Assembly: GCF_006345805.1 (NCBI RefSeq)
Contig: NW_021835239.1
Coordinates: 1 to 41,094, forward strand
Source: Octopus sinensis
Taxonomy: Eukaryota
Direction of reading: 5' to 3'
DNA: 41,094 bases
In this document: positions 1 to 35,733 of the stretch, piece after piece
How the letters are laid out: each line of letters starts with the position of its first letter
How positions within the stretch are numbered: position 1 is the stretch's first letter
Translations under genes and position numbers: made by a program
Notes under the pieces: model-generated
What the model was told of the DNA's origin: nothing
The model's input: only the letters and a program-made list of their open reading frames with translations
Database searches by the model: none

Positions 1-2540
1 AATTGCATAATATATTACGTAATTTATTGCATAATCTCAAGTACCCCCATATTCGACAGTTAGGTACTCCCCCAAATTGCATAATCTCAAATACCTGCAT
101 ATGCTCACATCGAGGAGCCTCCCAAAATTGCATAATATATTACGTAATCTATTGCATAATCTCAAGTACCCCCATTATCGAACATTTAGGGACCTCGCAA
201 AATTGCATAATATATTACGTAGTTTATTGCATAATCTCAAGTACCCCCATTTTCGAACAGTTAGGGACCTCCCAAAATTGCATAATATATTACGTAATTT
301 ATTGCATAATCTCAAGTACCCCCATATTCGAACAGTTAGTAACCTCCCAAAATTGCATAATATATTACGCAATTTATTGCATAATCTCAAATACCTTCAT
401 ATGCTCACATCTAGGGAGCTCCCAAAATTGCATAATATATTACGTAATTTATTGCATAATCTCAAGTACCCCCATATTCGAACAGTTAGGTACCTCCCAA
501 AATTGCATAATATATTACGTAATTTATTGCATAATCTCAAGTACCCCCTATTCGAACATTTAGGGACCTCCAAAATTGCATAATATATTACGTAATTTAT
601 TGCATAATCTCAAGTACCCCCATATTCGAACATTTAGGGACCTCCCAAAATTGCATAATATATTACGTAATTTATTGCATAATCTCAAGTACCCCCCATA
701 TTCGAACAGTTAGGGACCTCCCAAAATTGCATAATATATTACGTAATTTATTGCATAATCTCAAGTACCCCCATTTTCGAACAGTTAGGGACCTCCCAAA
801 ATTGGATAATATATTACGTAAATTATTGCATAATCTCAAGTACCCCCATATTCGAACAGTTAGGAACCTCCCAAAATTGCATAAAATATTACGTAATTTA
901 TTGCATAATCTCAAGTACCCCCATATTCGAACATTTAGGGACCTCCCAAAATTGCATAATATATTACGTAATTTATTGCATAATCTCAAGTACCCCCATA
1001 TTCGACAGTTAGGGACCTCCCAAAATTACATAATATATTACGTAATTTATTGCATAATCTCAAGTATCCCCATTTTCGAACAGTTAGGGACCACCCAAAA
1101 TTTCATAATATATTACGTAATTTATTGCATAATCTCAAGTACCCCCATATTCGAACATTTAGGGAGCTCCCAAAATTGCATAATATATTACGTAATTTAT
1201 TGCATAATCTCAAGTATTCCCATATTCGAACATTTAGGGACCTCCCAAAATTGCATAATATATTACGTAATTTATTGCATAATCTCAAGTATTCCCATAT
1301 TCGAACAGTTAGGGACCTCCCAAAATTACATAATATATTACGTAATTTATTGCATAATCTCAAGTATCCCCATTTTCGAACAGTTAGGGACCACCCAAAA
1401 TTTCATAATATATTACGTAATTTATTGCATAATCTCAAGTACCCCCATATTCGAACATTTAGGGAGCTCCCAAAATTGCATAATATATTACGTAATTTAT
1501 TGCATAATCTCAAGTACCCCCATATTCGAACATTTAGGGACCTCCCAAAATTGCATAATATATTACGCAATTTATTGCATAATCTCAAATACCTGCATAT
1601 GCTCACATCTAGGGACCTCCCAAAATTGCATAATATATTACGTAATTTATTGCATAATCTCAAGTACCCCCATATTCGAACATTTAGGGACCTCCCAAAA
1701 TTGCATAATATATTACGTAATTTATTGCATAATCTCAAGTATCCCCATATTCGAACAGTTAGGAACCTCCCAAAATTGCATAATATATTACGTAATTTAT
1801 TGCATAATCTCAAGTACCCCCATATTCGAACAGTTAGGGACCTCCCAAAACTTCATAATATATTACGTAATTTATTGCATAATCTCAAGTACCCCCATAT
1901 TCGAACAGTTAGCAACCTCCCAAAATTGCATAATATATTACGTAATTTATTGCATAATCTCAAGTACCCCCATATTCGAACAGTTAGGAACCTCCCAAAA
2001 TTGCATAATATATTACGCAATTTATTGCATAATCTCAAATACCTTCATATGCTCACATCTAGGGAGCTCCCAAAATTGCATAATATATTACGTAATTTAT
2101 TGCATAATCTCAAGTACCCCCATATTCGAACAGTTAGGTACCTCCCAAAATTGCATAATCTCAAATACCTGCATATGCTCACATCTAGGGAGCTCCCAAA
2201 ATTGCATAATATATTACGTAATCTATTGCATAATCTCAAGTACCCCCATATCGAACATTTAGGGACCTCGCAAAATTGCATAATATATTACGTAATTTAT
2301 TGCATAATCTCAAGTACCCCCATATTCGAACAGTTAGGGACCTCCCAAAATTGCATAATATATTACGTAATTTATTGCATAATCTCAAGTACCCCCATAT
2401 TCGAACAGTTAGGGACCTCCCAAAATTGCATAATATATTACGCAATTTATTGCATAATCTCAAATACCTGCATATGCTCACATCTAGGGAGCTCCCAAAA
2501 TTGCATAAAATATTACGTAATTTATTGCATAATCTCAAGT
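1..2540. repeat. 75-bp tandem satellite, about 34 units, runs off the window start
   Basis: Unit approx. GGGACCTCCCAAAATTGCATAATATATTACGTAATTTATTGCATAATCTCAAGTACCCCCATATTCGAACAGTTA. A recurrent variant unit ends AATACCT(G/T)CATATGCTCACATCTAGGGAGCT. The 25-aa periodicity in the ORF track reflects the 75-bp unit. Confidence 0.97.
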
Positions 2541-2648
2541 AATGAGTATAAAATTTAAAACTATTATATTTGTTATTATGCATAAAAATAAACAACCCTG
2601 TTTTTAACTGTTAGAGTAATTCCTGCTTTCCGAAAATCATCTCTATAT

Positions 2649-2785
2649 GTCGCTTCTCGGCCTTTTGGCTAAAATCAAAGTGTAGTATCTGTTCTTTTCA
2701 GCTTTATATCTGGGACGCCCTTACACGGGGCAAGATATAATGCTTATTTATGTGCCTTGGTATGTGTTGCGAAGCTTGCTTCCTC
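2649..2785 (+). ncRNA. U2: U2 spliceosomal snRNA (gene or 3'-truncated copy)
   Basis: GTCGCTTCTCGGCCTTTTGGCTAAAATCAAAGTGTAGTATCTGTTCTTTTCAG closely matches the universal U2 5' end, including the branch-point pairing sequence GTAGTA. An Sm-like TATTTTATG follows at ~2744-2752. The 3' end is uncertain. Confidence 0.9.
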
Positions 2786-2786
2786 C

Positions 2787-2824
2787 TCATAAACCGAGGT
2801 TGTATCATAAACCGAGGTTCGCTG
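2787..2824. repeat. Duplicated 15-mer TCATAAACCGAGGTT resembling a Tigger/pogo terminal repeat
   Basis: Direct repeat at 2787-2801 and 2805-2819. The reverse complement of the second copy plus flank reads CAGCGAACCTCGGTTTATGA, which is pogo-TIR-like. Confidence 0.45.
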
Positions 2825-2885
2825 AAAACCTAATTAACAGTACTTTAAGTAAAAAATAGTTATAACAGATAGAACGGTTCATAAG

Positions 2886-4281
2886 TTATACTTTTTTGAA
2901 ATAATGCGTAATCTTTTCTCCAAAACGATTTTTATCCCGTAAATTAATTATTATTTTTTTCCTTAAACCGCAGAAATCATTTAATAATTCTGAAGAAAGT
3001 TTGCATATATTTTCCTCCATATTATTAATAAGAGTCAGTGGATCTATGATGTCTGTTGATTCAGGCCCATTATAAAAATTTATTTCGCTTTCAAGCAATT
3101 CTTCGACAAAGACTTCGTTCACCATTTCTGTCACGTCCGTATGAATCTTCGAATTGATATTTATTGTTTCCTCCCATTTACACTTAAAAATTTTTTTCCA
3201 ACAATTTTGAATTTGATTTGAAGTTACATTGGCCCAGGCTTTAGAAATTAGTTGCATCACATTCCATAAATTGAAACTTTTGATTGCTTCCAAAAAATTG
3301 CTTCTATTTTCACAAATGCATACGAATTCGATAAGTAAATAACTGTAATTTGTCTTCAGTGCTTTAATTATGCCCATATCCAATGGCTGAACTAACGATG
3401 TAGTGTTTTTAGGTAAATATAAAAATTCAATGTTTGAATAATCGGATAGTCTATGAGAACTAGCATTATCCAACAACATTAATATTTTTCGGGTTTCAGA
3501 AAGTATTCTGGTATTTAATTTAAAAACCCAGCTTTTAAAAATTTCAGTTGTCATCCACGAATTTTTAGAAAAAGAGTACATGACGTTAAAAACATCAGGA
3601 TTGAATTGTTTTAAACACCGAGGGTTTCGATATTTGCCGATAATTAAAGGCTCCAGTTTCTCTCCAAGATAACTGCAGCATACAAGCAGGCTAACCCTTT
3701 CCTTGTGCTGCTTAAAACCAAACGAATTTTGACCACATTGTACAAATGACTTAGTTGGTGTATTTTTGAAATAAAGTGCAGTTTCGTCGCAATTAAATAC
3801 ATTTTCTTTACCGTAATAAACAACTTTTGTATCTAATCCTTGGAAAAAATGAGGGAGCATGGATGTATCTGCGGAACCCTTTTCACCACACAATGTTTTG
3901 TATTGTAAATTATGTCGTTTCTTGAATCTTTGAAGCCAACCATTAGACGATTTGAAATTATTCAATAATAATTTTGAAGCGACCATCGACCCAATTTTCT
4001 TAATGGTCGGTCCAGATAAGGGAACTTTTTCAAGTCGCAATTTATGAAAAATTTCGAAAACTTTAAGATCGAGATTTTTAAGCTTTTCAGAATCACTAGT
4101 TTGCTGGATAAATCAGAATAAATAGTTCCATTATCAAGAAAAGGGAAATCTTTTTTTATACGTGAAATTGTAGCCCTGCTAACTTTGAAAATTTCCGCAA
4201 TTCTGCGCTCTGAAAGCTGGTTCCGTTTAATATATTGGGCTATTTCGAGTTTTTTTCGTGATCAATTTTCAATTTAGGCAT
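2886..4281 (-). mobile_element. pogo/Tigger-family transposase: DDE_1 ORF 2886-4040 intact, N-terminal HTH frameshifted
   Basis: Motifs SNGWLQRFKKRH, FNCDETALY, LLDNASSH and VQPLDMGII (DD29D by my count). Upstream frame from ATG 4281 reads MPKLKIDHEKKLEIA...VSRATISRIKK. A TIR-like ATAACGAGGTCTA lies at ~4427-4439. Confidence 0.9.
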
Positions 4282-4459: not shown

Positions 4460-5790
4460 CCCCTTAGGTATCAAATAAGTAACACCAGTGCACAACCAGC
4501 TTGGGATACTATCCGGGGACGCTATACACTTCTCGATTATATTAAACATACAATCGTGCAATGAGGTACAGCGTTTTATAAAGAAATTAAATACTTTATC
4601 AATCCCGGTAGTTTTCCAATCTGGAAAGAGGGAAACTGCCTCATCGAACTTCTTGCGAATGTCAAAGACACCGCAAGACTCGGTCATCAAGGGTCTGGTG
4701 GACTCTAGGCTAAAGTCCACTTTTCCCTTGCGAGGTCGGACTTTCCACATACTCCCCCATGTGGCTAACATCTCCGAGTCTTGCTGGCTATCCTCCTTCA
4801 CCCCATCATCGTGTAAACGACGATAAAACATCCTGCGATTAAACTCAAACAGGTTGTTCTATCGATTATGTTTACACCTCGAATCATAGGTAGAGAGTTT
4901 CTTCTTGTAAACAAGAGTCCAGCCTCATTAATCACACCCGAAACGAGAAAGTGTGTAGTGGAGGGTGTGCGTAGTAGGGCGGCAATGTTATGTAAGACTC
5001 GGCTCAATGCACGGAACTTATTTAATGCCTTGAACGAGTACGCCATCTCATTGCTAAACTACTACGTTGGCCTGATCGAATTCGAGCCGAGTGAGTACGA
5101 TGAAATGGACCTTATTGTCCGAAGAGTGCTCCGAGAGAATCACGTCCACGTGTTGGCAAGCAATAAGGAGAGATTGTACTTGTCTCGCGGGCAGCTAGGA
5201 CGTGGACTGAGTAACATCGTACACTTAAGTGAGCGAATTCTTACTAAGAGGCACGACACCTTGTGGAGTGGGTCGAGTGTATCCCAAAGGAAGGCTGCCA
5301 TCCTTGCTGCTGAAAAATCGCGTGGTACACACCTAGGGACCATAAAAGGCTATGTGTCGGCTAAGTATGGTCTAGGTGCTACCCAAGTTAATGTGAAGGA
5401 GTTGATCAAACTTCAAAAGGAGTCTTTAATTAAAAAGATCAACTTAAAAGTCATTCACAAGACTCATCCCGTGTGTGATGACATGGGATGGACTGGTCAC
5501 CAAATACCACAAGCGGTACATAAGACAGTTGGATGTAGATAAGTCTCTACAGGCTTATATACAGTCAACTGTTCTTAAGAGACTCTGGAAAGTGTCTCGT
5601 TTGATGCTCGCCGATCCAGCCCTTTCCTGACGTTTAGTCACCGAGAGGCGCTGGACTGCACCTTCTCGAAGGTCTACAGTGCCAGAGAAGAGGAGGAAGA
5701 AGGGGAGGAGGTGTGTGGAGTGCCATCTTCTGCTCACTTCGAAGGCTCTGGACTTAGTTAGTAAAATTACTTAGTTAATTAGTTTTTTTT
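4460..5790 (+). mobile_element. Decayed R4/Dong-like non-LTR retrotransposon with inverted 5' segment
   Basis: Minus strand ~4460-4905 encodes the RT N-part (FEFNRRMFYRR, PDWKTTGIDKVFNFFIK, WLCTGVTYLIPKG). Plus strand ~4905-5480 encodes the thumb (LFNALNEYAISLLNYY, KERLYLSRGQLGRGL), then a YIQSTVLK C-terminal remnant and AATAAA near 5791. Confidence 0.8.
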
Positions 5791-7631
5791 AATAAAGCTC
5801 GATGACCTTAATTTTTTAATTTTTTTCCTTTTTACTTTCTTATTAAAGAAATTAGAGAAACTTCATGTTAATTCTCAACATTTGCCAGGATTTGTCTCTG
5901 TATTGCAGTTAATTTAGCTGCAATATCCATTTGTCCCGCATTCATTGTTTTTTCAAATGTTTATTCACAGTTTTCAGAATCTTCTAAAACATTTAGATTT
6001 TAGAGGGGAGGATGTATACAGATAATGTGCTTGTCATTGACTTATCATTATATAAGTTCACAAATTTTCTTATTAGCGATATCTTATAAATAGTATTAAG
6101 TTAGCCAATTTTTGTTTAATTTATAAATAATTGTGATTTATTTACGGACTTGATAGAAGTGTCCAGTGATTGGTCCAAAATGCTCGAGAGGTGAAATATT
6201 TGTACAACCAGGATTAAAAAATATTGTTTTCATTACGCCTCGAGATATACGTGCAAAGTAATATATATTAAAAAAACAGTTTAATAAATATATCAATTTA
6301 ATTTCTAACCAATGAGTTATTCACAATAAAATATGACCTTTAATTATAATGGTGACACTTGTCCTATTTTTTGTGTGCTTTGTGATACAAAAAGACTGTG
6401 GCTTAACCCAAGGGTTTTTGAAGAATTGCTTAATTTGAAAGATTTCTTGATTTATACAACTGTATTTTCAATTGAGAAAATGCTGCGGGAGATGGGATAA
6501 TAATTAACATAGAGAGAAACGTTACATTTCCTAATGGAGAAATATTCTCCCATCTAGAACATTTGAGACAATTGTAATCAATATTTCTTTAATACTAGTA
6601 AGTGTAATGGAGACTCACTGAAGAAAATACTAAACAACTCATTTGATGGGTTGGATAAATTATTCTATATGTATATTTAAATATTTCGAATTATTAGAAA
6701 TCTGTATGATTGTAATAACCGCATTATCAAATCTGTACAAATCTTATTCTAACATTAAAGTCACATGCCATCAAAAACCATCTTTCAGTCGCCAAAAATC
6801 AGTCGTCGTGCCAGGCTTTAGTATTTTATATTACTGACTGTGTAGTTTTTATAAAGACCAGAAAGTGTGCATGTTCACAAACGGGTCCCAACCCACACTG
6901 TATACTTTGTTATTCTCATATAAGAATTACGACAGTGATGAATGAAGCAAATATGATGTTAGCCGACAACAGTGTGGAAATAAAATTAGATCAGAATCAG
7001 GAGACAACAGTAACTATGGAAGAAGCATTTGGTGTATTTGTATACTCACAATAGATTGTAGCTTTTGTGACCACCCGATCCCAGATAATATGATCTGCAC
7101 AAGTGAATGTAACTGAAAAAATATTCCAACGATATTCATTAACTAACCTAATTATTTATTATAATATTTCTTGTTTCCGCTTTTCTTTATTGTTACATGC
7201 ACTAGTCAGAATTAAAGGCAAACTTTCTTAAGTGATTGCAATTGCTATTTTTGAAAAGGGTCACCTGCGATCCATCCGAGCACCGGTATCGTGCCAAAAG
7301 AGTACAGCCGCGAGGATTGACGGGTGTTGTCGTTGACCTGACCATTAGCATTTTGACTACTTTCCTGGCTACTATCTAATTTTGTTTTTAGACTTTCATT
7401 ATACGAGTAATAACAATCAGGAAAAGCTTAATATCTATAAATTAGTGATCCAACGTGACTGTGACTTAACACAAATGTTTGGAAAAATCACTTAGGGCTT
7501 TAGATATTGTGATTTCATTGGAGAATGTTGCGAAACATTCAAAATTAATTTTAATTCAACATGACGTTGCATTTCCCTTTGGAAAAACATTCTCCAAATT
7601 ACAAAATTGAAACATTTGTAATCAACATTTT

Positions 7632-7895
7632 ACCAATTTCAAAATGTCATTTTTATCAATTCTATCCGTATAAAATATGTCTTAATTTTTTCTAAGTCCC
7701 ATCTTAAGCTATTTTTAATGGTTTTCGTGACTTCTGAAAAATTAGATATGTAAAAAACCAACAAACCCATCCATTAAAAGAATATTGATTAATTAACGTT
7801 TTTTATTAATTTTAGTGGTTATCCATTACAAATTAATTAAAAAAGTACTTTTATTAAAAAAACTACTAAGTTAAATTAAGAATATCAGCGTAATT
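7632..7895. repeat. Outer part of left inverted arm (reverse complement of ~14360-14627)
   Basis: ACCAATTTCAAAATGTCATTTTTATC...AATATCAGCGTAATT matches the reverse complement of AATTACGCTGATATT...GACATTTTGAAATTGGT at roughly 90% identity by eye. Confidence 0.92.
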
Positions 7896-8977
7896 GAATT
7901 TGTTGTTGTGGTGTTGTGCATGTCCGTTTTTATTAATAAGAAGAAAACGAATCCCATGGGCCTTTCTGCAGAATCAAATAATAAAAACACTATAGTGGAT
8001 GCAGGAGTGTTGTCTCTGGGGCTGGATAACGGCACAAGAACTAATATTAACAATAATCCTACAGTTGGAAGTCGTGCTGCACCAACTAACTTTCATTCCC
8101 TGTCCGCCATTATTAAGGATGTCAAGTGTGTCTCTGAGACTGAATGGGTGTCTCAGGTGTTCGATGCTATCAAAGAAAGATTTGGAAGGATGCCTAGAGG
8201 TGGCTGGGATCTCATTCTGAAAGAGTTCAATGAAAAATACTTAAAGTGCTCAAGTCTATATCAACTAAAAAAAATGGTCAAACCACCAAATGGGAATCAA
8301 AATGTAGGGAAAAGAGGCGATTGTAGTGAAGGAAAATCAAACATGAATATTGAAATTTCTAACTTCAAGAATTGCCTAGAAGAACTCAAAGTCCAACTCG
8401 AAAAAATCAAATCTATTCCTAGAGAGTCTCGAAAACCTACCCCAAAAATCCAAAAAATAAAGTGAAGACTAATATTCTGTCTGGATTGAATTCTGCAATT
8501 TATCGTATTACAGAAGATAATCCTCCACAAAATATGGATCAGATTACAGACATATTATATGCTGCACAGTGTGCTTATTTGGCCTTAACTATAAGACCTA
8601 AAACAAAAAGCACATGGTTGGAAAATACAGAAAACAAAATTTCGAAATTAGCAGCTGAAATTAAATTAGTGAATTCCTTTTCGAGACAAGCATTACCTCA
8701 ATCTGAAAAGAAAAATGTAATGGATATTCTTTGCCGCTACGGGTATAAGAAATCTAAAAAGGGAGAGCTAATGAGAATTGAGGCCTTAATGAATGATCTA
8801 ATCAGAATTAAAGAGAAACAAATATTTCATTCTATCTGAATTTCTTGACGAAGATATTAATTCGAGGAAAGAGTTCCGAAAAGACAATGCGTGCTTCGAA
8901 TTAAACCGCAGAAGGTTTTACCGAAACTTATCGTCGAATAATGAAGTAACCTTATATGGCTTGATGATGATGACTGT

Positions 8978-9883
8978 TTGTTATTCTGGGAGAACGTCTG
9001 GAGAAAGAAAAATATGGATCACGTTTCGTATAATTGTGTGGATGTGAGGTCTACCGGTGGTGAAGCTATGGAACCTCAATTCACAAATGAGTTGGTTAAA
9101 GATATGCTCAAATATGTGCCTGATTGGAAGGCGTGCGGATGCGATGGAACATATAACTTTTTCATCAAGAAAATGGAATCATTACATGAATTCTTGTGTA
9201 ATGAAGTAATCAGGATAATCAAGGGTGAGTACATGCCAGAGAGTTGGTTTTACACGGGATTAACTTACTTGATTCCAAAAAAGGATGATTGTGAGAATCC
9301 AAAGGATTTACGTCCTATAACGTGTATGCCAACTTTGTACAAGCTTGTAACGAAGTGTGTAAATGTTAAACTCTGTGACTTTGTGGATGGATTTGGGCTG
9401 ATTTCAGACAATCAACTCGGAACCAGAAAGCAATGTCAGGGTGCGAAAGAGCAAGCACTTATTAACCAATGCTTGAACAAGGAATATGGAAACAGTCTGT
9501 ACTCTTCTTGGGTGGATGTAAAGAAAGCCTTTGACTCGGTTGATCACCAATTTTTATTCCACATATTGGACAGCTCTGGAATTCCACTCTGGATTATTAA
9601 CTTTGTGAAAAGTATAGTCAAGAAGTGGAAAGTAAATCTACATCTTGATGGAAGAAAAATTGGTTCAGTAAAGCTAACCCGAGGAATTTTGCAAGGAGAT
9701 TCATTATCCCCATTGCTATTTGTTATGGTAATGGATCCCCTAAGCAGGATCCTGAACTTTAAATTTCCCAAATTGCAAATTAATCAGGAGGATCTAAATA
9801 TGTTGACATATTCTACCAATCACCTATTTTTTATTGACGATCTAAAGATATTTGCTCTTAAAGAGAAACTGTTATTAAAATGA
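8978..9883 (+). pseudogene. Reverse transcriptase domain of the R4-like element
   Basis: PDWKACGCDG, LRPITCMPTLYK, VDVKKAFDSV, GILQGDSLSPLLF, HLFFIDDLK. Confidence 0.92.
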
Positions 9884-10820
9884 TGGAAGCTGTTAAAGAA
9901 TTTTTTGACATTGTTGGCCTGGAGATGAACTCTGAAAAATCGGCCTCTAATGTCAAATCTTTATCATGCTGTGAGACTTTGGAAGGAATCAATGGATATC
10001 GCTATTTGGGCGTATTTGAAGATGGAGGAAGTAATGTCCTCAAGAATAAGTTATGAATTCAATAATGGAGAATGTAAAAAAAAGAATAACTATGTTGTCA
10101 AAAACAAAGTTGAATTCGGTGAACTTATTCTATGTCATAAATGAATATGCATTGTCCCTATATAATTATTATATTGGGCTAATAATATTGAGCCATATGA
10201 ATTTGATGACATTGATAAACAAATACGTCGACTGCTCATGACACTCAAGTTACATCTCCAGCCTGCAAATAAAGAAAGGCTGTCTTTAGACCGCAAAACT
10301 TTTGGAAGAGGACTTGCCTCCATCTCGTTCAAGAGCGAATTAATACTCATGCAATTCCTTAAAAGCTTGGAAAAACAGTCGGCTGTGTGTTTGCGAAGGT
10401 CGGGGATTCTGCGAGTTATTAAAACAAAGAAATGGCATTGGCTACAATCGCAGGATTTCTTACCTCTAAATACGCTATTGCTGACACAGAAAGCATAGAT
10501 ATTAATTTTCTCAAAGACATTCAGAAAAAATATTTGCTAAACAAAATAAAGTCCAAGTCACTACACTCTGTTATGTTCAAATGCCTGGATGAATCAAATG
10601 TCGATCTTTCTACTTCCTCAGAATGGTTAGCCAAAGGAAATAATGGCCCCCGAAGTGAAGCATTATACTGCCTTCTGCAAGATAGAAATTTATTTTTTGC
10701 AAACACGAGGCCGTTATGCAATCACTGTAAAAAAAGTAAACAAACTGTTGATCATCTGGCCACTCAGTGTGGTAAAATGCTCAATAGCGATTACCTCCGA
10801 AGACATGACGAGGTGGTTAA

Positions 10821-11219
10821 ATGTGTCCATCTTCATATTTGTCGAATGTATGGAATCAAAAAGAGCAGAAATTAAAGACTCATTCAGTTCAGTCGATATT
10901 GTCAACTCAAAATATAGAAATTAGAGTTGACACGTCAATTATAACAGAAAATAAAGTCAACTTCAATAAACCGGATATCTTTGTTTATGACAAGATTAAA
11001 AAGGAAATAACCTTAATCGAGGTGGGCATAACATCTCAGGACCGCTTAAAACAAGTGGAAGTTGAGAAACTTCACAAATATGATTTCCTTGCAAATGAAC
11101 TATCACTACTCTACGAATGCCAAGTTAAAATTATTCCCGTGGTTCTGACCTGGGATGGTGTTGTCACAAGATGCTTCAAAATTATATGGATAAACTATAT
11201 ATTGAAAAATCTACAATGA
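10821..11219 (+). pseudogene. Restriction-like endonuclease domain of the R4-like element
   Basis: NKPDIFVYDKIKKEITLIEVGIT...EKLHKYD. Confidence 0.88.
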
Positions 11220-11534
11220 CATACATCCATCGGTTGTGCTCAAAAGGACGCTAGAGAGCATGATAATTGAACACAAGCATGGAATGAAGATAACTGGCGA
11301 GGAATATGCCTCTGCGACCGATCAACTAGTAGAAATGGCATGCCGCCAGGACACTCCATTCAAAGATAAAAGACGCACAAAACTGACGCAGAGATAGAGA
11401 ATGAAGAGGAACAAGCAGCAGACTCTTCTCCTAAAAGGAGAAGAGAGACTACCAATCAGGATTGAAAGTCCTATTTAAATATTTTAACCTTAATTAAATT
11501 TTGGTTTCGTAAATAAACTTGTTTCAGCGTAATT

Positions 11535-12170
11535 CTAAAAGCCAACACTAACCCTAACCTAACCCTAACCCCAACCAAACCCTAATTCCAACCTAACCTT
11601 AACCCTAACCAAACACTAACCCTAACCAAACCCTAACCCTAATTGTAACCAATCCAACCCTAACCCTAACCAACCCCTAAGGCTTAACGTAACCAACCCT
11701 AACCCTAATTGTAACCAATCCAACCCTAACCCTAACCAACCCCTAAGGCTTAACGTAACCAACCCTAATCCTAACCAACCCCTAAGGCTTAACGTAACCA
11801 ACCCTAACCCTAATTGTAACCAATCCAACCCTAACCCTAACCAACCCCTAAGGCTTAACGTAACCAACCCTAACCCTAATTGTAACCAATCCAACCCTAA
11901 CCCTAACCAACCCCTAAGGCTTAACGTAACCAACCCTAACCCTAATTGTAACCAATCCAACCCTAACCCTAACCAACCCCTAAGGCTAAACGTAACCAAC
12001 CCTAACCCTAACCAACCCCTAAGGCTTAACGTAACCAACCCTAACCCTAACCAACCCCTAAGGCTTAACGTAACCAACCCTAACCCTAATTGTAACCAAT
12101 CCAACCCTAACCCTAACCAACCCCTAAGGCTTAACGTAACCAACCCTAACCCTAATTGTAACCAATCCAA
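11535..12170. repeat. Telomere-like (CCCTAA-rich) minisatellite with 66- and 39-bp units
   Basis: Unit AACCCTAACCCTAATTGTAACCAATCCAACCCTAACCCTAACCAACCCCTAAGGCTTAACGTAACC. Confidence 0.95.
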
Positions 12171-12318
12171 TTAATTTCAAACTTTTACTAAATCCTAATT
12201 ATTAAAACCAGCTCTAACTTGACATAACCCCTATTAAGCCCTAACTTTACAAAGCTTTGTTTAAAAATCAACCAGATTTTGAACTTTATATTTGTAAAAA
12301 AAAATTTCTAAAATAAAG

Positions 12319-13346
12319 TCAGCTAAGCTTTTTTAATCTTGAAACATGTACGTCAGTAATCTTAGTTGTCTCATGAACAGTGGAGTTGTAATTAAATACA
12401 ATGTCTTTAAGAATGTCCAGATAACGTCCGAATTGATCACGTGACCCACTTGCGGAAGAAATCCATCTTTTAATCGATTGATTAAATCTATTTCTTTAAC
12501 GATAACTTTTAAACCTTTCAACTTGGCCCTGGATCCATGGAGCTCTTGCTCTGCCGAAAACATGTTTTATTGAATACTTTTCGCATAATTCATCCATAGC
12601 GGTATTCTTAAATTCCTTACCATTGTCCGTGTGCAAAATGACCGGAGGCCCTAATAGAACACTTATTGGAAATGGACTTACCAATATAATAAAACGCTCG
12701 CTGGAATAGACTTGTTATTTCTTCAACTGTCTTCGTTTTTGACATTTCCACAACAACATACTTGGAAAAAGAGTCTATAATTACTAAATCTAAAAATATA
12801 AATCGAATGTAATACCCAGCAAAAAGAATCATTTAGAGAGGAGTAACGTCTAAGATTTATCAAATCAGCGATGTATCTGTCACGAGGTCTCTTAGCGATT
12901 ATTAGAGTTATTTGAGGCTTTGTAGCCATCAATTTCTTTGACTAACAAATATAGATCAAAAAATACCTGACAAAATGAACATTTTGACACAATCTGAGCA
13001 ACTTCGGATCGGGCAACATCGTAATAACGATTACGAAGTTTGTCGAATAGACGATCTCGTCCAAACAAAGTGATCCATATTATGTTCTGACTGACCATGT
13101 TTAACAATAGCTAACCTCGATGTGTTTTAGCTTTAGCTCATATTCCTCGACCGCAAAAAAACGACGTTCAGTATCTTCATGTAAGATGTAAGTTTTTCCG
13201 TCTTTAAAGCGGAATAGATTCGAAATTTTTCTTAGTCTGTATCTTTTTTTCTTGTCGACATCTTTGAAAGATTTTGGATCGCGATCAGAATTAAGATAAT
13301 CCTTAATTTGTTCTAATTCTTCCAAAAAAAGCTTCACTAAAACCAT
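12319..13346 (-). pseudogene. Ginger-type (rve, HHCC) integrase/transposase copy A, five tiny introns, 3'-truncated
   Basis: Spliced product: MVLVKLF...HIE|SEHNMDHFGRDRL...CSFCQ|SKKLMATKP...PRDRYIADL...FCW|ILVIIDSFSK...YYIG|PPVILHTDNGKEF...QGQVER|FNQSIKRW. Introns at 13091-13115, 12942-12966, 12790-12815, 12651-12681 and 12488-12514. It has a 4-nt duplication (TTTG) and an inferred 1-nt deletion after the third intron. Confidence 0.88.
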
Positions 13347-13413
13347 GTGGCAAATTGAAATAATTATTTTTTTTATTAGTTATAATATGTCACCGTCCGC
13401 TGAATGGACCACG

Positions 13414-14638
13414 CCGTTGAGTGGACCGACAACTTTTTATTAAAATAAAAATGTAATTTTTATGAAATAGATGACAATTGAATTATTTTAAGTTAATAGA
13501 TAATATTATAGCTAATAAAAAAATTATTATTTCAAATTGCCGCATGGTTTTAGTGAAGCTTTTTTTGCAAGAAATAGAACAAATTAAGGATTATATTAAT
13601 TCTGATCGCGATCCAACATCTTTTAAAGATGTCGACAAGAAAAAAAGATACAGACTAAGAAAAATTGCTTATGACAACATTCTTGTGGCAGCGGACAAAA
13701 TGATAAAGAGACGAAAGTGGAAATACGACGAAGATGCGATAATTGAGGGAGATCGGGTGATTTTAAGAACTGATTTGGACTCAAATCGACCAAAGCTGCC
13801 TTGTAATGGAGACTTGTAAAGTTAGGGCTTAATAGGGGTTTCTGTCAAGTTAGAGTTGGTTTTAAAAATTAGGATTTAGTAAAAGTTTGATATTAATTGG
13901 ATTGGTTACAATTAGGGTTAGGGTTGGTTACGTTAAGCGTTAGGGTTTGGTTAGGGTTAGGGTTGGCTCTTAAAATTAGGCTTAATTATGTTAAGCGTTA
14001 GGGTTTGGTTAGGGTTAGGGTTGGCTTTTAGAATTAAACTTAATTATGTTAAGCGTTAGGGTTTGGTTAGGGTTGGCTTTTAGAATTAGGCTTAATTATG
14101 TTAAGCGTTAGGGTCTGGTTAGGGTTAGGGTTGGCTTTTAGAATTAAACTTAATTATGTTAAGCGTTAGGGTTTGGTTAGGGTTGGCTTTTAGAATTAGG
14201 CTTAATTATGTTAAGCGTTAGGGTCTGGTTAGGGTTGGCTATTAGAATTAGGCTTAATTATGTTTAGCGTTAGGGTTTTGTTAGTGTTTGGTTGGCTTTT
14301 AGAATTAACTTAATTATGTTTAGTGTTAGGGTTTGGTTAGTATTTGGGTTGGCTTTTAGAATTACGCTGATATTGTTAATTTAACTTACTAGTTTTTTTA
14401 AATAAAAGTAATTTTTTAATTAATTTGTAATGGATAACCACTAAAAATAATAAAAATACGTTAATTAATCAATATTCTTTTTAATTATTGGGTTTGTTGG
14501 TTTTGTACATATCTAATTTTTTCAGAAGTCACGAAAACCATTAAAAATAGCTTTAAGATGGGACTTAGAAAAATTAAGACATATTTTATACGGATAGAAT
14601 TAATAAAAATGACATTTTGAAATTGGTCCATTCAACGG
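13414..14638 (+). mobile_element. Internally deleted sister copy (A') of the integrase element, bounded by 14-bp TIRs and containing a telomere-like array
   Basis: CCGTTGAGTGGACC (13414-13427; second copy 13397-13410) versus GGTCCATTCAACGG (14625-14638), 13/14 inverted match. ORF from ATG 13544 joins the N-terminus of copy A directly to an integrase C-terminal segment (EGDRVILRTDLDSN). No TSD found. Confidence 0.7.
13900..14360. repeat. Telomere-like (TTAGGG-rich) minisatellite with 52/58-bp units
   Basis: Unit GGTTGGCTTTTAGAATTAGGCTTAATTATGTTAAGCGTTAGGGTTTGGTTAG(GGTTAG). Confidence 0.95.
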
Positions 14639-14639
14639 G

Positions 14640-15800
14640 AGGCCAAGTTAGACTTGCTAACCAGGAAACGAAACATATGCATTGTATGCTACATCGATAT
14701 GCACTTGCTGCAAAAACATTACCTTCAGATTTAAGATATGTTCTCGATGATGTCGTACATATCATAAATTATATTAAAAAGAGTGCTTCAGACTTATTTG
14801 CGAAGAATTTGAAAAGGATGGAAAGGCTTTGTTATTCCACACGGAGGTGAGATGGCTATCTCGGGGAAACATTCTTGCAGAGTTTTTTCTTTGAGGAATG
14901 AATTATCTGAATATTTTATTTCGAAAACCATTCAAATCATCGGAATTTATTTCGAAATAATGGATAGTTCATGGCTATCTAAACTTGCTTACTTGAGGAT
15001 GTCTTTTCTCGTATAAATTCACTCAACAAATCGCTTCAGGGAAGACATGAAACAATAATTGATTTTGTGGAAAAATTAAGTTTGTTAACTGTTTCATATT
15101 AATTATTAGTGCTTTTTTGATGAAGTTAACACTGTGGAAAAAAAAGTAAAACCAAATAATTTTACTATGTTTGAATCTTTTGAAGAACAATCTGTAAAAT
15201 AGATGCATTTGAAATCAAAAAAATAACCGAACTTATTTATGCACATTTTACATATCTTCAACAAGAAGTAATAAATTTTTCCAGAATTGAACGAAATTGA
15301 TTTGAAATACATTCGTACACCATTCAGTGTTGATCCACGTTTGGTCGATGAAAATATCGAAGAGGCTTTTATTGACATGATCAATAATTCAAACGCAAGA
15401 GATTTGATGAAAAACTTGCTTTATCAATTTTTGTTGCGAAATGTGTAAGCATTATCCTTTTGTAAGCGCAATGCATTAAATTTGTTGCTTATATTCCCGA
15501 CAACATATTTATGCGAACATGGCTTCTCAGCACTTCTCAATATAAAAAATAATCATCGCGCAAGACTGAATATTGAAGATGACATCAGGGTTTGCTTGTC
15601 GACAACCGAGCCTCTTATTGAAAAAATTGCCTCGAAAAAACAATATCAACCTTCTCACTAATTTTCTCTATTGATTTAATAAAAAATTTTGTTTTTAGAT
15701 AAGTAAAATTTTTTTGACAAAAACTTAATAATATGTAGGGGTCCGCAAAATTTTTCATTTACTCACAAGGTTCGCGGACAAAAAAGGTTGAAGACCACTG
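14640..15800 (+). mobile_element. hAT (Buster/Charlie) transposon 3' half, decayed
   Basis: HCMLHRYALAAK, FHTEVRWLSRG, AFLMKLTLWKK, TTYLCEHGFSAL. Terminal GGTTGAAGACCACTG ends at 15800, followed by an nnnTAnnn-type site CACTAGGG. Confidence 0.85.
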
Positions 15801-15824: not shown

Positions 15825-18800
15825 ATGCTTATCAAAATAAGTCATTTTGTGTGTTGTTTATATAATTCTTGTGGTGAGGTGAGTGAGCGAAATATAATGA
15901 AAGAAGAAAACTCCAAGACGATGGAAACTCTTCGGATAGTTGGGAGGGATCCCTCTATCTGTTATGGGTGTAATAAGATCAACACCAGGAAATGTGGCGT
16001 TTACTGTTCAATGTGTAATAAATTCTGGCATATTAGCTGCGCGCACCTTACCAAAGCCGCAGTGAAATTACTCCGGCGCTGGAGCTGCCACTGTTGTATG
16101 GCTTTACTCGGAATCGCGGCTTTGCAGCATCAGTCTCCTTCGCTTTATGAACCCAAATCAGAACACTATATTCTCAAAATTTCCAACTTACGGAAATCTA
16201 AGAAGATACCATTACGTATCCCTAAACAGGCTCGGATCTCAGCGGCAAACTGCTTGTGCGATCTTATCACTGATGCGCTAAGCTCCGGGGGGACCATTCT
16301 TGGATCCGTCTCCTCTCTTTTGCACCTTGTGTGTTTGGACAAGCAATTGATGGTTCAGTACAAAAGAAGAGTCTCTCGGCTGCCATTAAGTCGAACTCTG
16401 CGAGATTGGATGTCTCATGGATTGATTTCGATTGTGAAGCGACCAATTACCAAACGTGCATCACGGAAAAATCCCCCCAGTGGTTCAAAACCCAAGTTAG
16501 TCGTAAACTCATGGATGGCGACATCCGTGCGGCAGTTCGGGTCCTTTCGTCCGCTGATTCACTTGCTGAATCTACTGCCGAGACTTTGGAACACCTCAAA
16601 AACAAACATCCGATGCCCCCAGATGACTTACGGGAGTTTCCCACACGAGACAATGCAATTATACTGTCAATTTCTGATGATGAAATTTTGGAAGGGATTA
16701 AATCTTTCAGACCGAGTAGCAGTGGGGGATTTGATGGTCTCCGGCCGAGTCATATAAAGGACGATTTCCCGACTGACTATGGAGACTGGAATCCGCCTGA
16801 TCAAGTGTATTACCAAGCTTGTCGAACGGATTGTCAATGCTGAGATTTTAGGCTTTGCAAGGGATCTACTTTTCTGTTCACACCTTATTGCTTTCCGAAA
16901 GAACGATGAAGGAGTCCGCCCCATTGCAGTCGGTAATGTCTTCCGGAGGCTCGCATGCAAAATTGCAGCCCGAAGAGTCTGTCCCCGTGTTGCCGCTGAA
17001 TTATTCCAGTCCAACTGGGAGTTGGTGTTTCCAACGGATGTGAAGCTGCTGTCCACGCGACAAGAGCTTTTTTTTCACCTGACACAAGACATTCCCCAAA
17101 TTCCTTTGCGGTGAAGCTGGATATCTCAAACGCGTTCAACAGTCTGAGAAGGGACTGTATGCTGGAATCGTGCTCGCAGCGTACCCCAGAGATCATGAGT
17201 CTGGCTCACCTTGCTTACGGGTCCGAAAGTTCGCTTGTCTTTGACAAACACATTGTCCGTTCCACGGACTGGAGTCCAACAAGGTGACCCTTTTGGGCCC
17301 TACTATTCGCTCTGTCAATCGACGAGGTGGCTCGTAATGTAAAGACACCTCTCAACCTTTGGTACCTTGACGATGCCACTATTGGTGGCCCTGTTGATGT
17401 CGTCTTGGATGAGTTATATAAAATTGTTCCTGCCCTGGCAAAAATGGGGCTGATAATCAACACCAAAAAAACTGAGATCATAAATATCTCAGTCCCAATT
17501 CAAGACTTTGGCTTAGTAATGGAAAAGATTTCAGAAATCTTGCCAGACACAAAACAAACACGCCTCAACGATGTTTATTTTCTTGGGTGTCCTTTCGGAG
17601 AGTCCGAAGTGCAAAACCACCTCAGAGCTAAGAGTGTCGAAATGTCCCGTTTTACTGAACGCCTCTCTCTACTCGACTCCCACACGGCCTTTTTCCTCCT
17701 CAAAAATTGCATCCACGTGCCCAAACTGTTATATTTATGAGATGCTCGCCCTGCTTTATACAAGATGAAATATTGCATTCTATCGATGATACGTTAAGAT
17801 TGTGTGCCGAGTGGATCCTAAATGTCCGTTTCGATAATGATGGGTGGACCCAGTGTAAACTACCTCTTAATTCTGGCGGAGCTGGCCTAAGATCCGCCCT
17901 GGACCTTGCCCTCCAGCTTTCCTGTCCTCTCACTCATCCTGCCGAAGGCTATCCTTGGAGATTCTACATAAATCCCCCGAATCTTCTTTGGACAGGCCTT
18001 TTGAAGATGGATGTATGCTGTGGAAGGAATCAGGATTAAAATTCCCGATCCAAACATCACTCCAACAGAGCTGGGACAAATTACGCTGCGAATTCACCGC
18101 AGACAACCTGGCAATGAGGCTCGACCAGCACCGCCTCGCCTGCTTACGCTCTGCAGCTGTGCCACACAGTGGGTCATGGCTGAATGCTATGCCAATTGCT
18201 GGCCTCGGAACATTATTAGAGGATGACTGCATGCGTATCGGTACTGCACTGAGACTCGGACTTGACATCTGCGAACAACATCGTTGTAGATGTGGAAAAA
18301 TGGTTGACGTCAAAGGTGTACACCCACTCTCTTGCAAACGAAGTGCTGGCCGAGCTCCTCGGCACTCCGCTATTAACAATGTTATCTTAAGAGCTCTTGA
18401 GTCGGCGGGCTTCCTTCGATCCTAGAGCCAGTGGGCTTAGATCGTGGAGATGGGAAAAGACCCGATGGAATGACACTTTTCCCTACTCCTGTGGAAAATC
18501 GTTGGTTTGGGATTCAACGTGTGTTGACACCCATTCCAAAACTAATATGATCTCTTCTGCTGTTCTCCAGGTTCTGCAGCAGATGCTGCAGAGCAAAGAA
18601 AAATTGCCAAATACGCAAATCTTGGACAACGGTACCGCTTCGTACCTATCGCTGTGGAGACTTCTGGGGTAACCGGCCCTCTTACGACTTCTTTCATCAG
18701 AGAAGTCGGAGGAAAAGTTGCTAGGCGACGTGGGGAGCCTCGAGAAGTGTCATGGTTATTCCAACAAATTGGAATAGCTGTCGTTCGCGGCAATGCACAC

Positions 18801-19269: not shown

Positions 19270-20029
19270 GTTTGGCGCTTGGGTCTTAACGGGTTTCTAA
19301 ATGTTACTCGTTTTGCTCTTTCGTCTGTTAAAACTTTTTTTCCGTTCACTTTTTAGAGCACCTACCTTGACGCTAGATTTTGTTTTCAACCCATCCGCGA
19401 CACTTTTAAAAATGTTTTTAAAGCTCGCGGTTTTTTCATTTGGGCATCAGTATGTCTTATCTTTTGTTTTTGCTTTTTACTCCTTTTGTTCTTCTGTGTG
19501 CTTTTGATTATCATTGTTATCTTGGATAAAATTTATTCAAGATCTTATCCTGCACTTGTGGCCTATGATGGTTCTTGGGATCATAACGATACGGGCTATC
19601 GACACTATGGTCTTGTTGCCCGTGTCCATGTTTTGCAGTGAACGTTTTAAACATCCCATAATTCCAATGAAACAATTAAAAGACTATTCATTCGTCAATT
19701 TCACATTGAACAACCTAACCCGCGCAAAACAAGCCACGCACATCCTGTGTGTTCTGGCTTTCGCTCCAAATTCAGGTCCGCGTTACGTTCATTCGCACAA
19801 CAACATGACCTTACACTTCATTGTTTTGAGGGCGCTCGTCCGGATGGTTATGCCAGCACTCGTGGTTGGCACGTTGCCCCGGACGTCACGATGCACGTCG
19901 TGGACGACCCAATTAACTCGATCTGGTCGAGCTTGTCGACGTGGATTACTACGTTGACTTGGCTGATATTTGTTGTAACTTGCGTCCCGTTTGCCTTTAT
20001 ACGGCAAACCCGAAGCTTACCGGTGGTGT
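19270..20029 (+). pseudogene. Nodavirus-like protein A endogenous viral element, part 1 (hydrophobic anchor and capping/methyltransferase domain)
   Basis: Hydrophobic stretch (FFIWASVCLIFCFCFLLLLFFCVLLIIIVIL), HPVCSGFR (H-x6-R, 19741), GWHVAPDV, LVDVDYYVDL (DVDYY at 19938-19952), RPVCLYTANP. About three frameshifts. The 5' boundary is approximate. Confidence 0.8.
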
Positions 20030-35435: not shown

Positions 35436-35733
35436 AATTTGTGATATTAAAACAAAGAGATAGAAGAAAAGCGTTAAGTCCCTGCGGCAAGGACGCAGTG
35501 TGCGTTGACACGAAACCTCGTACCATCCCTTTAGGGGAATTCTTGAAACCAAAAGACGAAGACTGGAAAATCCAAACTATCAAAAGGTCTACATGAGCGG
35601 AGGGCCAATCTTGCTGAACATGAATGTTAAAAATGGAAGTTGGAACTTTCGCAAGGAAGTATAGACCCTTTACAGTCGAATTAAAATAGAAATACATAAA
35701 GAATGACAAGGCTATAATAACACTCTGAACAGG

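What the first reader, a model, noticed from the sequence alone, without database searches (positions are those of the whole stretch)
7632..14638. Integrase DNA transposon that carries telomere-like repeats, present as a head-to-head pair
Seen: two copies of the same integrase point away from each other (N-terminal inverted repeat 13224-13388 / 13503-13666). Each is followed by the same 3' arm: an ~85-bp unique part (inner edges 12252 and 13814), a TTAGGG-like minisatellite, and ~270 bp of AT-rich DNA. The right copy is closed by a 14-bp TIR pair. C-rich repeats face left and G-rich repeats face right, like a mini-chromosome. The two copies expanded different units (66/39 bp versus 52/58 bp). 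Copy C has a short GTTAGGTAGGTAAGG at the equivalent 3' position. Inference: a Ginger-type family carrying telomere-like, G-quadruplex-prone cargo, which could bind telomere proteins, seed chromosome healing or spread interstitial telomeric sequence. I do not know of such a family, but I could not search.
Basis: partly seen in the sequence, partly recalled or inferred. Interest (0 to 1): 0.8.

Follow-up and report, generated by a model that had tools for sequence, protein, structure and literature searches.

The report
Dead transposon pair carrying telomere-like repeats
Two broken, head-to-head copies of an ordinary cut-and-paste DNA transposon (Ginger2/TDD type) each carry a short telomere-like tract that expanded into a minisatellite, a curiosity with no sign of any telomere function.

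Summary
Window 7632-14638 holds two inverted copies of one integrase-encoding DNA transposon. They are 95.7% identical over 510 non-array bases. Each has the same 3' arm: about 85 bp of unique sequence, a TTAGGG-like minisatellite, then about 255 bp of AT-rich DNA.

- The true end is a 40-bp TIR, TGTCACCGTCC... at 13388-13427. It is conserved in relatives.
- Both outer 3' TIRs are truncated.
- Both copies are dead deletion derivatives. The left is a frameshifted pseudogene. The right is a 91-codon fusion of N- and C-terminal pieces.
- A 3.6-kb non-LTR retrotransposon with an 11-bp TSD splits the left arm.
- 'Copy C' is a different family (34% aa identity).

Termini, TIR build, domains and named homologues (KRBA2-like, SCAND3) fit Ginger2/TDD.

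The arrays trace to a short degenerate telomere-like tract, roughly 100-150 bp, that each copy expanded separately. They have at most two perfect TTAGGG in tandem and no canonical G-quadruplex motif. They lie about 270 bp inside the element end. No relative examined carries such an array.

Whether the host genome holds a whole family with this tract could not be tested, because that genome is not in any searchable collection here. Telomere function is unsupported.

The parts
7632..7884 (-). Left copy: AT-rich subterminal segment of the 3' arm. It ends at ACC, which is only 3 nt of the terminal-repeat motif. The outer TIR is missing.
   Evidence: 94-97% identical to 14371-14627. The junction with an unrelated repeat at 7631/7632 was located.
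7885..7895 (.). Target-site duplication TCAGCGTAATT of the nested retrotransposon. The second copy is at 11524-11534 and the empty site is at 14360-14370 in the right arm.
7896..11523 (+). Nested non-LTR retrotransposon: an RT, then a CCHC motif, then a PD-(D/E)XK-type endonuclease C-terminus. It is a later insertion and not part of the transposon.
   Evidence: RVT_1 E=6e-24. The CCHC and endonuclease motifs were read from the ORFs and recognised from knowledge of R2/NeSL-type elements.
11535..12170 (-). Left copy: telomere-like minisatellite, C-rich on the + strand. It holds 45 TTAGGG hexamers on the element's coding strand, in 39/66-bp units.
12171..12252 (-). Left copy: ~85-bp unique part of the 3' arm.
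   Evidence: 95% identical to 13814-13900
12319..13346 (-). Left copy: integrase/transposase pseudogene with an H2C2 zinc finger and an rve DDE core. It has several frameshifts and stops, and an internal deletion of about 100 C-terminal codons. The last codons, VHVSRLKKLS*, are retained.
   Evidence: Pfam rve and Integrase_H2C2. Three-frame translation. Alignment to relatives.
13347..13387 (-). Left copy: remnant of the 5' UTR. The outermost ~114 bp, including the 5' TIR, are missing.
   Evidence: alignment A3
13388..13427 (+). Right copy: complete 5' terminal inverted repeat, TGTCACCGTCCGCTGAATGGACCACGCCGTTGAGTGGACC. It has a TGTCA terminus and two 14-nt sub-repeats at 13397-13410 and 13414-13427.
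   Evidence: 80% identical over 45 bp to the L001 5' TIR (E=2.7e-6), and it also matches the L001 3' TIR. The same TGTCACCGTC start is seen in octopus locus L086.
13544..13819 (+). Right copy: 91-codon ORF made of integrase codons 1-41 fused to a C-terminal piece (AYDNILVAADKMIKRRKWKYDEDAIIEGDRVILRTDLDSN...). It is an internal-deletion derivative.
   Evidence: Alignment A1 places the second half at the conserved A..M..R.W.ND....G..V block of the relatives.
13814..13900 (+). Right copy: ~85-bp unique part of the 3' arm.
13902..14368 (+). Right copy: telomere-like minisatellite, G-rich on the + strand. It holds 19 TTAGGG, in 52-58-bp units that include the outer boundary sequence GGCTTTTAGAATTA.
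14371..14624 (+). Right copy: AT-rich subterminal segment.
14625..14638 (-). Right copy: inner sub-repeat of the 3' TIR (GGTCCATTCAACGG). The outer ~26 bp of the TIR are absent, and a hAT-like coding fragment follows.
   Evidence: The flank ORF was read.

Best explanation
The region holds two old, immobile copies of one family of Ginger2/TDD-type cut-and-paste DNA transposon, lying head to head.

The family's intact form, inferred from both copies plus complete relatives, would be about 2.5-3 kb. Its parts in order are:
- a 40-bp TIR that starts with TGTCA and carries two 14-nt sub-repeats, which are probably the transposase binding sites;
- about 115 bp of 5' UTR;
- a single ~410-codon integrase-like transposase (H2C2 zinc finger, DDE core, C-terminal SH3-like part);
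- a non-coding 3' arm;
- the inverted TIR.

In this lineage the 3' arm acquired a short degenerate telomere-like tract. The tract was roughly 100-150 bp of TTAGGG, TTAGG and TTGGGG variants. Its most likely origin is telomeric repeats laid down or captured during double-strand-break or gap repair of a copy (inferred). The tract then travelled as passive cargo.

After the two copies separated (K2P 0.044), each expanded a different 39-66-bp or 52-58-bp segment of the tract by slippage or unequal exchange. This produced the two different minisatellites.

The head-to-head layout is best explained by insertion of the short copy (right) into the AT-rich 5' UTR of the resident copy (left). Later deletions would have removed the displaced 5' end of the left copy and the outer TIRs. 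A non-LTR retrotransposon then inserted into the left arm.

The 'mini-chromosome' orientation of the arrays follows automatically from the inversion. The arrays have no demonstrated function.
For: Shown:
- The rve and H2C2 domains are present.
- Full-length homologues are 36-56% identical. The named ones are KRBA2-like, SCAND3 and microsporidian transposable element. KRBA2 and SCAND3 derive from Ginger2 (PMC3575427).
- The 40-bp TIR with a TGTCA terminus is conserved at both ends of the complete relative L001 (2.27 kb, one gene).
- The same TGTCACCGTC start, preceded by TATATAT, is seen in octopus locus L086.
- The microsporidian relative L087 is complete. It has a perfect 42-bp TIR that starts with TGTGG and carries two sub-repeats, and a 5-bp TSD, TTTAT.
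- Ginger2 is defined by TGTNR termini, a 4-5-bp TSD, an AT-rich target, H2C2 plus DDE, and no GPY/F or YPYY motif (PMC2836005). The relatives have no GPY/F or YPYY motif.
- The two copies carry different internal deletions.
- The copies are 95.7% identical over 510 non-array nt.
- The array lies between the integrase and the TIR motif in both copies.
- The left repeat unit contains the inner boundary of the tract, and the right unit contains the outer boundary.
- The filled and empty sites of the nested retrotransposon prove that the arms are homologous.

Inferred:
- A repair-based origin of the tract, by analogy with short interstitial telomeric sequences (PMC9693754).
- Nested self-insertion as the cause of the head-to-head layout.
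Against: - No target-site duplication can be shown for either copy, because both outer TIRs are truncated. The two flanks are unrelated.
- The nested-insertion model needs at least two later deletions.
- Only two linked copies are available, so the evidence that the tract is cargo of a family rests on a single locus.
- The host's true telomere repeat is unknown. The nearest named TE homologue is from Octopus sinensis at 43%, which only hints at a TTAGGG-telomere animal.
- The TIR (40 bp) is slightly below the 50-180 bp range given for metazoan Ginger2.
Confidence: 0.75

Rival explanations
1. Fold-back inverted duplication. A single element was cut at its 5' terminus (13388) by transposase. The resected end folded back on the near-palindromic ATATTATA at 13503 and copied the element in reverse. 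This would give the palindrome with a 114-bp spacer. All differences between the arms arose later, in place.
For: - The asymmetric spacer (13388-13502) is exactly the 5' end of the right copy, and the break point coincides with the transposase cleavage site.
- The junction lies in AT-rich, near-palindromic sequence.
Against: - The left arm's homology stops within 11 nt of the right copy's element end, instead of running on into the hAT-like flank. Independent transposon copies explain this naturally. A duplication model has to treat it as coincidence.
- It needs three or more later internal deletions that happen to look like typical transposon deletion derivatives.
Confidence: 0.12
2. Functional telomere-like cargo. 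The family carries the array because it recruits telomere proteins, forms G-quadruplexes, seeds new telomeres at breaks or spreads interstitial telomeric sites.
For: - The tract is made of TTAGGG-type hexamers: 64 in the two arrays against 28 in the rest of the 41-kb window, and 20 of those 28 sit in one satellite.
- It lies inside the element in both copies.
- TE-borne telomeric repeats have been proposed as a source of interstitial telomeric blocks (PMC9693754).
Against: - There are never more than two perfect TTAGGG in tandem, and there are 0 canonical G4 motifs.
- The arrays lie about 270 bp inside the ends, so they cannot act as ends.
- Most hexamers come from copy-specific tandem duplication of a few founders.
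- Two complete relatives (L001, L087) and 84 other loci have no such array.
- Both copies here are dead.
Confidence: 0.07
3. Assembly artefact: a false inverted join or a collapsed repeat.
For: Assemblers often break or join at repeat boundaries, and the junction at 13387/13388 is a repeat boundary.
Against: - The arms differ at about 4-5% of sites.
- They carry different internal deletions, differently expanded arrays and a 3.6-kb insertion with its own TSD in only one arm.
- An artefactual duplication would be near-identical.
Confidence: 0.03

Closest known systems
Ginger2/TDD DNA transposons (Bao, Kapitonov & Jurka 2010, PMC2836005; sources of KRBA2 and SCAND3, PMC3575427)
   Same: - A single integrase-like transposase with an H2C2 zinc finger and a DDE core.
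- No GPY/F or YPYY motif, and no extra protease or PHD domain.
- TGTNR termini (TGTCA here).
- Short TIRs.
- AT-rich insertion context.
- A 5-bp TSD in a complete relative (L087), as in TDD-4 and TDD-5.
- Non-autonomous deletion derivatives.
   Different: - The TIR is about 40 bp, against the ~50-180 bp reported for metazoan families.
- The TSD is not observable in the window.
- The 3' arm carries a telomere-like minisatellite, which is not mentioned for any described Ginger family. The terms 'tandem' and 'telomer' do not occur in PMC2836005.
Ginger1 DNA transposons
   Same: Integrase-derived transposase and TGTNR termini.
   Different: Ginger1 has CCGG/CCGT TSDs, YPYY and GPY/F motifs and C-terminal OTU, Ulp1 or PHD domains. 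None of these was found here or in the relatives.
Ciliate telomere-bearing transposons (Tetrahymena Tel-1, Cherry & Blackburn 1985, cited in PMC2831315; Oxytricha TBE1, from my own knowledge)
   Same: DNA transposons that physically carry telomere-type repeats.
   Different: - In ciliates the C4A2/C4A4 repeats form the very termini of the element. Here the tract is degenerate, internal (about 270 bp from the end) and expanded as a 39-66-bp minisatellite.
- The transposase families are unrelated.
TE-borne internal tandem repeats and short interstitial telomeric sequences
   Same: - Minisatellites or satellites that arise inside DNA transposons and MITEs and expand lineage-specifically are well documented (review PMC6947457).
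- Short ITS are seen as relics of double-strand-break repair and often adjoin TEs (PMC9693754).
   Different: Here the ITS-like tract sits within the TIRs of a defined transposon and is shared by two copies, so it may have been transposed. That has been proposed but is rarely documented.

Membership tests
Ginger2/TDD | Transposase with an H2C2 zinc finger plus a retroviral-type DDE (rve) core | tested here: met
   Pfam rve (E=9e-8 on one fragment) and Integrase_H2C2. H..H..C..C, D161, D230 and E266 fall in near-invariant columns of alignment A1.
Ginger2/TDD | No YPYY or GPY/F motif, and no extra OTU/Ulp1/PHD domain (this separates it from Ginger1) | tested here: met
   A regex search found no GP[YF] or [YF]P[YF][YF] in 10 full-length relatives. 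Their Pfam content is rve +/- H2C2 only. The window copies lack part of the C-terminus, so this rests on the relatives.
Ginger2/TDD | Termini 5'-TGTNR...YNACA-3' | tested here: met
   TGTCA at 13388. TGTCA at both ends of L001. TGTCA in L086 and TGTGG in L087.
Ginger2/TDD | TIRs of about 50-180 bp | tested here: inconclusive
   The 5' TIR is about 40 bp, judged by comparison with L001. L087 has a perfect 42-bp TIR. The window's 3' TIRs are truncated, so their full extent cannot be measured.
Ginger2/TDD | 4-bp TSD (5-bp in TDD-4/5) at an AT-rich (RTATAY) target | tested here: inconclusive
   The window has no intact outer end and therefore no TSD. The right copy's 5' end abuts ATAATA. L087 has a 5-bp TSD, TTTAT. 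L086 is preceded by TATATAT. The L001 flanks show no TSD; it is a short-read contig.
Ginger2/TDD | Only the transposase gene between the TIRs (no RT, RNase H or pPolB) | tested here: met
   L001 has one 413-aa gene in 2.27 kb. L087 has one called gene, the 392-aa integrase, within the 3.45 kb between its TIRs (450-3903). The window's right copy is TIR, UTR, ORF and arm only.
Ginger2/TDD | Phylogenetic placement with Ginger2, KRBA2 and SCAND3 transposases | not tested
   No tree was built and no Repbase sequences were available. The only support is the names of homologues: KRBA2-like [Octopus sinensis], SCAND3 [Dictyocoela].
Ginger1 | CCGG/CCGT TSD, YPYY and GPY/F motifs, C-terminal protease or PHD domain | tested here: not met
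Maverick/Polinton or LTR retrotransposon (other carriers of rve integrases) | Integrase linked to pPolB and capsid genes, or to RT and RNase H, within long TIRs or LTRs | tested here: not met
   The integrase has its own start codon about 115 bp from a 40-bp TIR. Complete relatives are 2.3-3.5 kb with one gene. The only RT nearby belongs to a separately inserted element with its own TSD.
Telomere-bearing transposons (ciliate Tel-1/TBE1 type) | Telomeric repeats form the extreme termini of the element | tested here: not met
   The arrays end about 270 bp inside the TIR motif.
Genuine telomeric or interstitial telomeric array | Runs of perfect (TTAGGG)n | tested here: not met
   There are at most 2 perfect hexamers in tandem. 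The hexamers are embedded in 39-66-bp units.

The most novel reading that the evidence does not exclude
The host genome contains a mobile Ginger2 subfamily that carries a telomere-derived tract within its TIRs, and this subfamily has seeded many interstitial telomere-like minisatellites. That would be a documented case of a cut-and-paste transposon spreading ITS in an animal, possibly with effects on fragile sites or binding of telomere proteins.
Probability: 0.3. Interest if true: 0.45.

Novelty: new member of a known kind. Interest (0 to 1): 0.25.

Why it matters
As it stands, this is TE annotation. It is an undescribed Ginger2/TDD family, with a terminal sequence (TGTCACCGTC...) conserved between this genome, an octopus and an unidentified organism in a public sequencing run. 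It is caught here as two decayed nested copies.

The one feature of wider interest is that a telomere-like tract lies inside a transposon's inverted repeats. If the host genome holds many independent copies with the tract, that would directly support the long-standing but thinly documented idea that some interstitial telomeric sequences are spread by transposition. It would also give a clean example of minisatellite birth from a short founder tract.

Nothing found here suggests a role in chromosome ends.

Tried and rejected
- **Same-genome copies.** The right copy's 113-aa ORF is not on record. Protein searches with the reconstructed left integrase, with Copy C and with a LINE ORF gave nothing above 56%, 49% and 43% identity. 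The host genome is therefore not in the collections, and the genome-wide co-occurrence test could not be run.
- **Viral-contig scans.** Exact-pattern scans of viral contigs for the TIR and for the arm gave 0 hits.
- **Metagenome scan.** The first attempt failed on a too-gappy alignment. The second returned 80 distant relatives (at most 40% identity). None has the TIR or a TTAGGG array.
- **Single insertion into a hAT copy.** I tested whether the pair sits as one insertion inside a hAT copy. The left flank does not continue the right flank's hAT-like ORF. The left flank is instead a different repeat (7564-7630, similar to 6519-6586). Pfam does not recognise the right-flank fragments.
- **Array as reiterated transposase-binding sites.** The 14-nt TIR motif has no match in the arrays, even with 3 mismatches. 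Rejected.
- **Copy C as a third family member.** Rejected: 34% aa identity, no TIR and no array.
- **Rfam and tRNA scans.** Nothing was found in the region.
- **The sigma-70 promoter scan** is irrelevant for a eukaryote.

Full report
**What is in the sequence**

The interval 7632-14638 contains two inverted copies of one repeat. BLASTN of the right copy against the window and the inverted-repeat scan match three blocks of the right copy to the left copy in reverse:
- 13503-13666 matches 13388-13224 (94%).
- 13814-14364 matches 12252-11640 and beyond.
- 14360-14627 matches 7895-7632 (94%).

Over 510 aligned non-array bases the copies are 95.7% identical, with K2P 0.044.

**The gene**

The minus strand from 13346 to 12319 encodes an integrase. 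Pfam finds rve and Integrase_H2C2. The reading frame is broken by several frameshifts and stops.

A stitched 312-aa translation finds full-length homologues of 390-490 aa at 36-56% identity. The named ones are 'KRAB-A domain-containing protein 2-like [Octopus sinensis]', 'SCAN domain-containing protein 3 [Dictyocoela]' and microsporidian 'putative transposable element'.

Alignment A1 shows three things:
- The zinc-finger H/H/C/C and the DDE residues sit in near-invariant columns.
- The left copy jumps from '...HETTKIT' straight to the last codons 'DVHVSRLKKLS*'. It therefore lacks about 100 C-terminal codons.
- The right copy's 91-codon ORF (13544-13819) is codons 1-41 fused to the conserved C-terminal block 'A..M..R.W.ND....G..V.L..D.D.N', and it then runs into the arm.

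The two copies are therefore different internal-deletion derivatives of one ~410-codon gene. Neither can make transposase.

**The real ends**

A complete relative was recovered from a public sequencing run (L001, 2,342 bp; protein P0001, 46% identical). It carries a single gene flanked by these inverted ends:

- 5' end: TGTCACCGTCCGGTGGGCGGACCCCGCCGTTGGCGGGACC
- 3' end: GGTCCATTTAAGGGCGGGGTCGGCCGTCTGGACGGTGACA

The window has the same structure at 13388-13427: TGTCACCGTCCGCTGAATGGACCACGCCGTTGAGTGGACC. It is 80% identical to the L001 TIR over 45 bp, E=2.7e-6.

The other sub-repeat is at 13397-13410.

The right copy's far end has only the inner sub-repeat (14625-14638), and a hAT-like coding fragment then follows. 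The left copy's far end keeps just ACC (7632), and an unrelated repeat then follows. Both outer TIRs are truncated, so no target-site duplication can be read.

Two further relatives confirm the architecture:
- An Octopus sinensis locus (L086) begins TATATAT|TGTCACCGTC... 173 bp upstream of its ATG.
- A microsporidian element (L087) is complete. It has a perfect 42-bp TIR that starts with TGTGG and contains two 16-nt sub-repeats, and it has a 5-bp TSD, TTTAT.

**Classification**

According to Bao et al. 2010 (PMC2836005), Ginger2/TDD elements have:
- TGTNR termini;
- short TIRs;
- 4-bp TSDs (5-bp in TDD-4/5);
- AT-rich targets;
- a transposase with H2C2 and DDE but without the YPYY and GPY/F motifs, and without the extra domains of Ginger1.

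KRBA2 and SCAND3 derive from Ginger2 (PMC3575427). The relatives here lack GPY/F and YPYY and have no extra Pfam domain.

I therefore file the element as a Ginger2/TDD-type transposon, with three caveats:
- The TIR is about 40 bp, not 50 bp or more.
- The TSD could not be seen in the window.
- No phylogeny was built.

Ginger1, Polinton and LTR-retrotransposon readings fail their defining features.

**The nested retrotransposon**

The left arm is interrupted at 7896-11523 by an element that encodes an RT (RVT_1, E=6e-24). A CCHC motif and a PD-(D/E)XK-like C-terminus follow the RT; I read these from the ORFs, and the assignment rests on knowledge of R2/NeSL-type elements.

The element is flanked by the 11-bp duplication TCAGCGTAATT (7885-7895 and 11524-11534). 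The right arm preserves the empty site at 14360-14370. This is an internal proof that the two arms are orthologous stretches of the same element.

**The telomere-like arrays**

| | Left array | Right array |
|---|---|---|
| TTAGGG hexamers (element's coding strand) | 45 | 19 |
| Most perfect hexamers in tandem | 2 | 2 |
| Canonical G-quadruplex motifs | 0 | 0 |
| Repeat unit | 39/66 bp, includes the inner boundary ATTGGATTGGTTACAA | 52-58 bp, includes the outer boundary GGCTTTTAGAATTA |

Only the outermost ~100 bp of the left array (11535-11640) still looks like a plain degenerate telomere tract, with CCCTAA, CCTAA and CCCCAA variants.

The simplest history is as follows. A short degenerate telomere-like tract of roughly 100-150 bp was present in the common ancestor of the two copies. 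Each copy then independently expanded a different sub-segment of it into a minisatellite.

The tract lies about 270 bp inside the terminal motif, so it is interior cargo and not an end. The orientation, with C-rich to the left and G-rich to the right, is a direct consequence of the two copies being inverted.

The TIR motif does not recur in the arrays, so they are not reiterated transposase-binding sites.

**How general is the cargo?**

None of the following has a TTAGGG-type array:
- the two complete relatives, L001 and L087;
- four further relatives (L083-L086);
- 80 distant metagenomic relatives.

L083 has an unrelated GT-rich minisatellite downstream of its integrase, but its TIRs are not on the contig.

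'Copy C' (about 37140-38400) is a second, different Ginger2-like integrase. It is 34% identical, has no detectable TIR, and carries only a trivial GTTAGGTAGGTAAGG.

The cargo is therefore specific to this lineage. Whether it is carried by many copies in the host genome could not be tested, because no protein above 56% identity to any TE of this window exists in the searchable collections.

The nearest named TE homologues are from Octopus sinensis. This hints weakly at a mollusc-like host, in which TTAGGG would be the true telomere unit. That is an inference.

**Why head to head?**

The intact 5' TIR of the right copy abuts position ~115 of the left copy's 5' UTR, in AT-rich sequence (ATAATA|TGTCA).

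The best explanation is insertion of the short copy into the resident copy. One later deletion would have removed the displaced 114-bp 5' end of the left copy together with the right copy's outer 3' TIR. A separate truncation would have occurred at 7632.

A fold-back duplication at a transposase-made break is possible. It does not explain why the left arm's homology ends within 11 nt of the element's end, nor why the two copies carry different transposon-style deletions.

An assembly artefact is unlikely given 4-5% divergence and the structural differences.

**Verdict**

The Ginger-type reading is right, and more precisely it is Ginger2/TDD-like. The telomere-like tract is genuinely inside the element. 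The functional ideas (G4 formation, telomere-protein binding, chromosome healing) have no support. The ITS-spreading idea remains untested because only one locus is available. TE-borne minisatellites and TE-adjacent short ITS are well known (PMC6947457 and PMC9693754). Telomere-bearing transposons exist in ciliates (Cherry & Blackburn 1985, cited in PMC2831315). This is a new member of a known kind with an unusual passenger, and its interest is low to moderate.

Noticed in passing
window 2649-2837 (+), next to 76-2541: A full-length U2 spliceosomal snRNA gene (Rfam RF00004, 95 bits, E=5.5e-18) lies directly after a ~2.4-kb satellite of 75-bp units (about 28 copies plus variants). A pogo-like transposase and fragments of a restriction-like-endonuclease retrotransposon follow within 3 kb. 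Some such retrotransposon families are known to target U2 genes (from my own knowledge).
   Followed up: no
window 7896-11523 (+): A non-LTR retrotransposon (RT, then CCHC, then a PD-(D/E)XK-like endonuclease C-terminus) with an 11-bp TSD, TCAGCGTAATT, and no poly(A) tail. Related fragments are at 4463-4768 (-), 33406-33579 and 34014-34136.
   Followed up: partly
window ~37140-38400 (+): A second Ginger2-like integrase ('Copy C'), 34% identical to the first, split into three frame segments (short introns or frameshifts). Its best database hits are 45-49% identical, and no TIR was found.
   Followed up: partly
window 14639-15660 (+); 27792-29759 (+); 31923-33167 (-): hAT-like transposase remnants (motifs LLFHTEVRWLSRG and FPTTYLCEHGFSALL, recognised from knowledge). 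The first directly abuts the truncated right end of the transposon. Pfam gave only weak zf-C2H2_12 and DUF4371 hits for the second.
   Followed up: partly
window 2886-4040 (-): An intact-looking 384-aa pogo/Tigger-type transposase ORF (DDE_1 E=1e-36, HTH_Tnp_Tc5).
   Followed up: no
window 19941-22874 (+): A LINE with an apurinic-type endonuclease and an RT. Its nearest named homologue is an uncharacterised Octopus sinensis protein at 43% identity, the only clue to the host's affinity.
   Followed up: partly
window 15825-18425, 34700-36817, 38649-40040: GC-rich (41-51%) islands in an otherwise ~32% GC window. They encode RT-type ORFs of another retroelement family, and one follows Copy C directly.
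   Followed up: no
window 6519-6586 and 7564-7630: A 68-bp direct repeat (78% identical). Its second copy ends exactly at the left junction of the transposon pair. Its nature is unknown.
   Followed up: partly
L001 63-120: In the complete relative, the terminal 10-mer of the 5' TIR recurs inverted 47 bp further in (GTCACCGTCC...GGACGGTGAC). The 5' end is therefore itself a 57-bp palindrome. This is not seen in the window's TIR.
   Followed up: no
L083 2140-2341: A relative's integrase (P0006) is followed, about 740 bp downstream, by a GT-rich minisatellite (87-bp units rich in TGTGTGTGG) on the coding strand. The contig lacks TIRs, so it is unknown whether the minisatellite lies inside the element.
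   Followed up: partly
L087 450-3903: A complete Ginger2/TDD-type element in the microsporidian Enteropsectra breve. It has perfect 42-bp TIRs (TGTGGTGCGCC...) containing two 16-nt sub-repeats, and a 5-bp TSD, TTTAT.
   Followed up: yes
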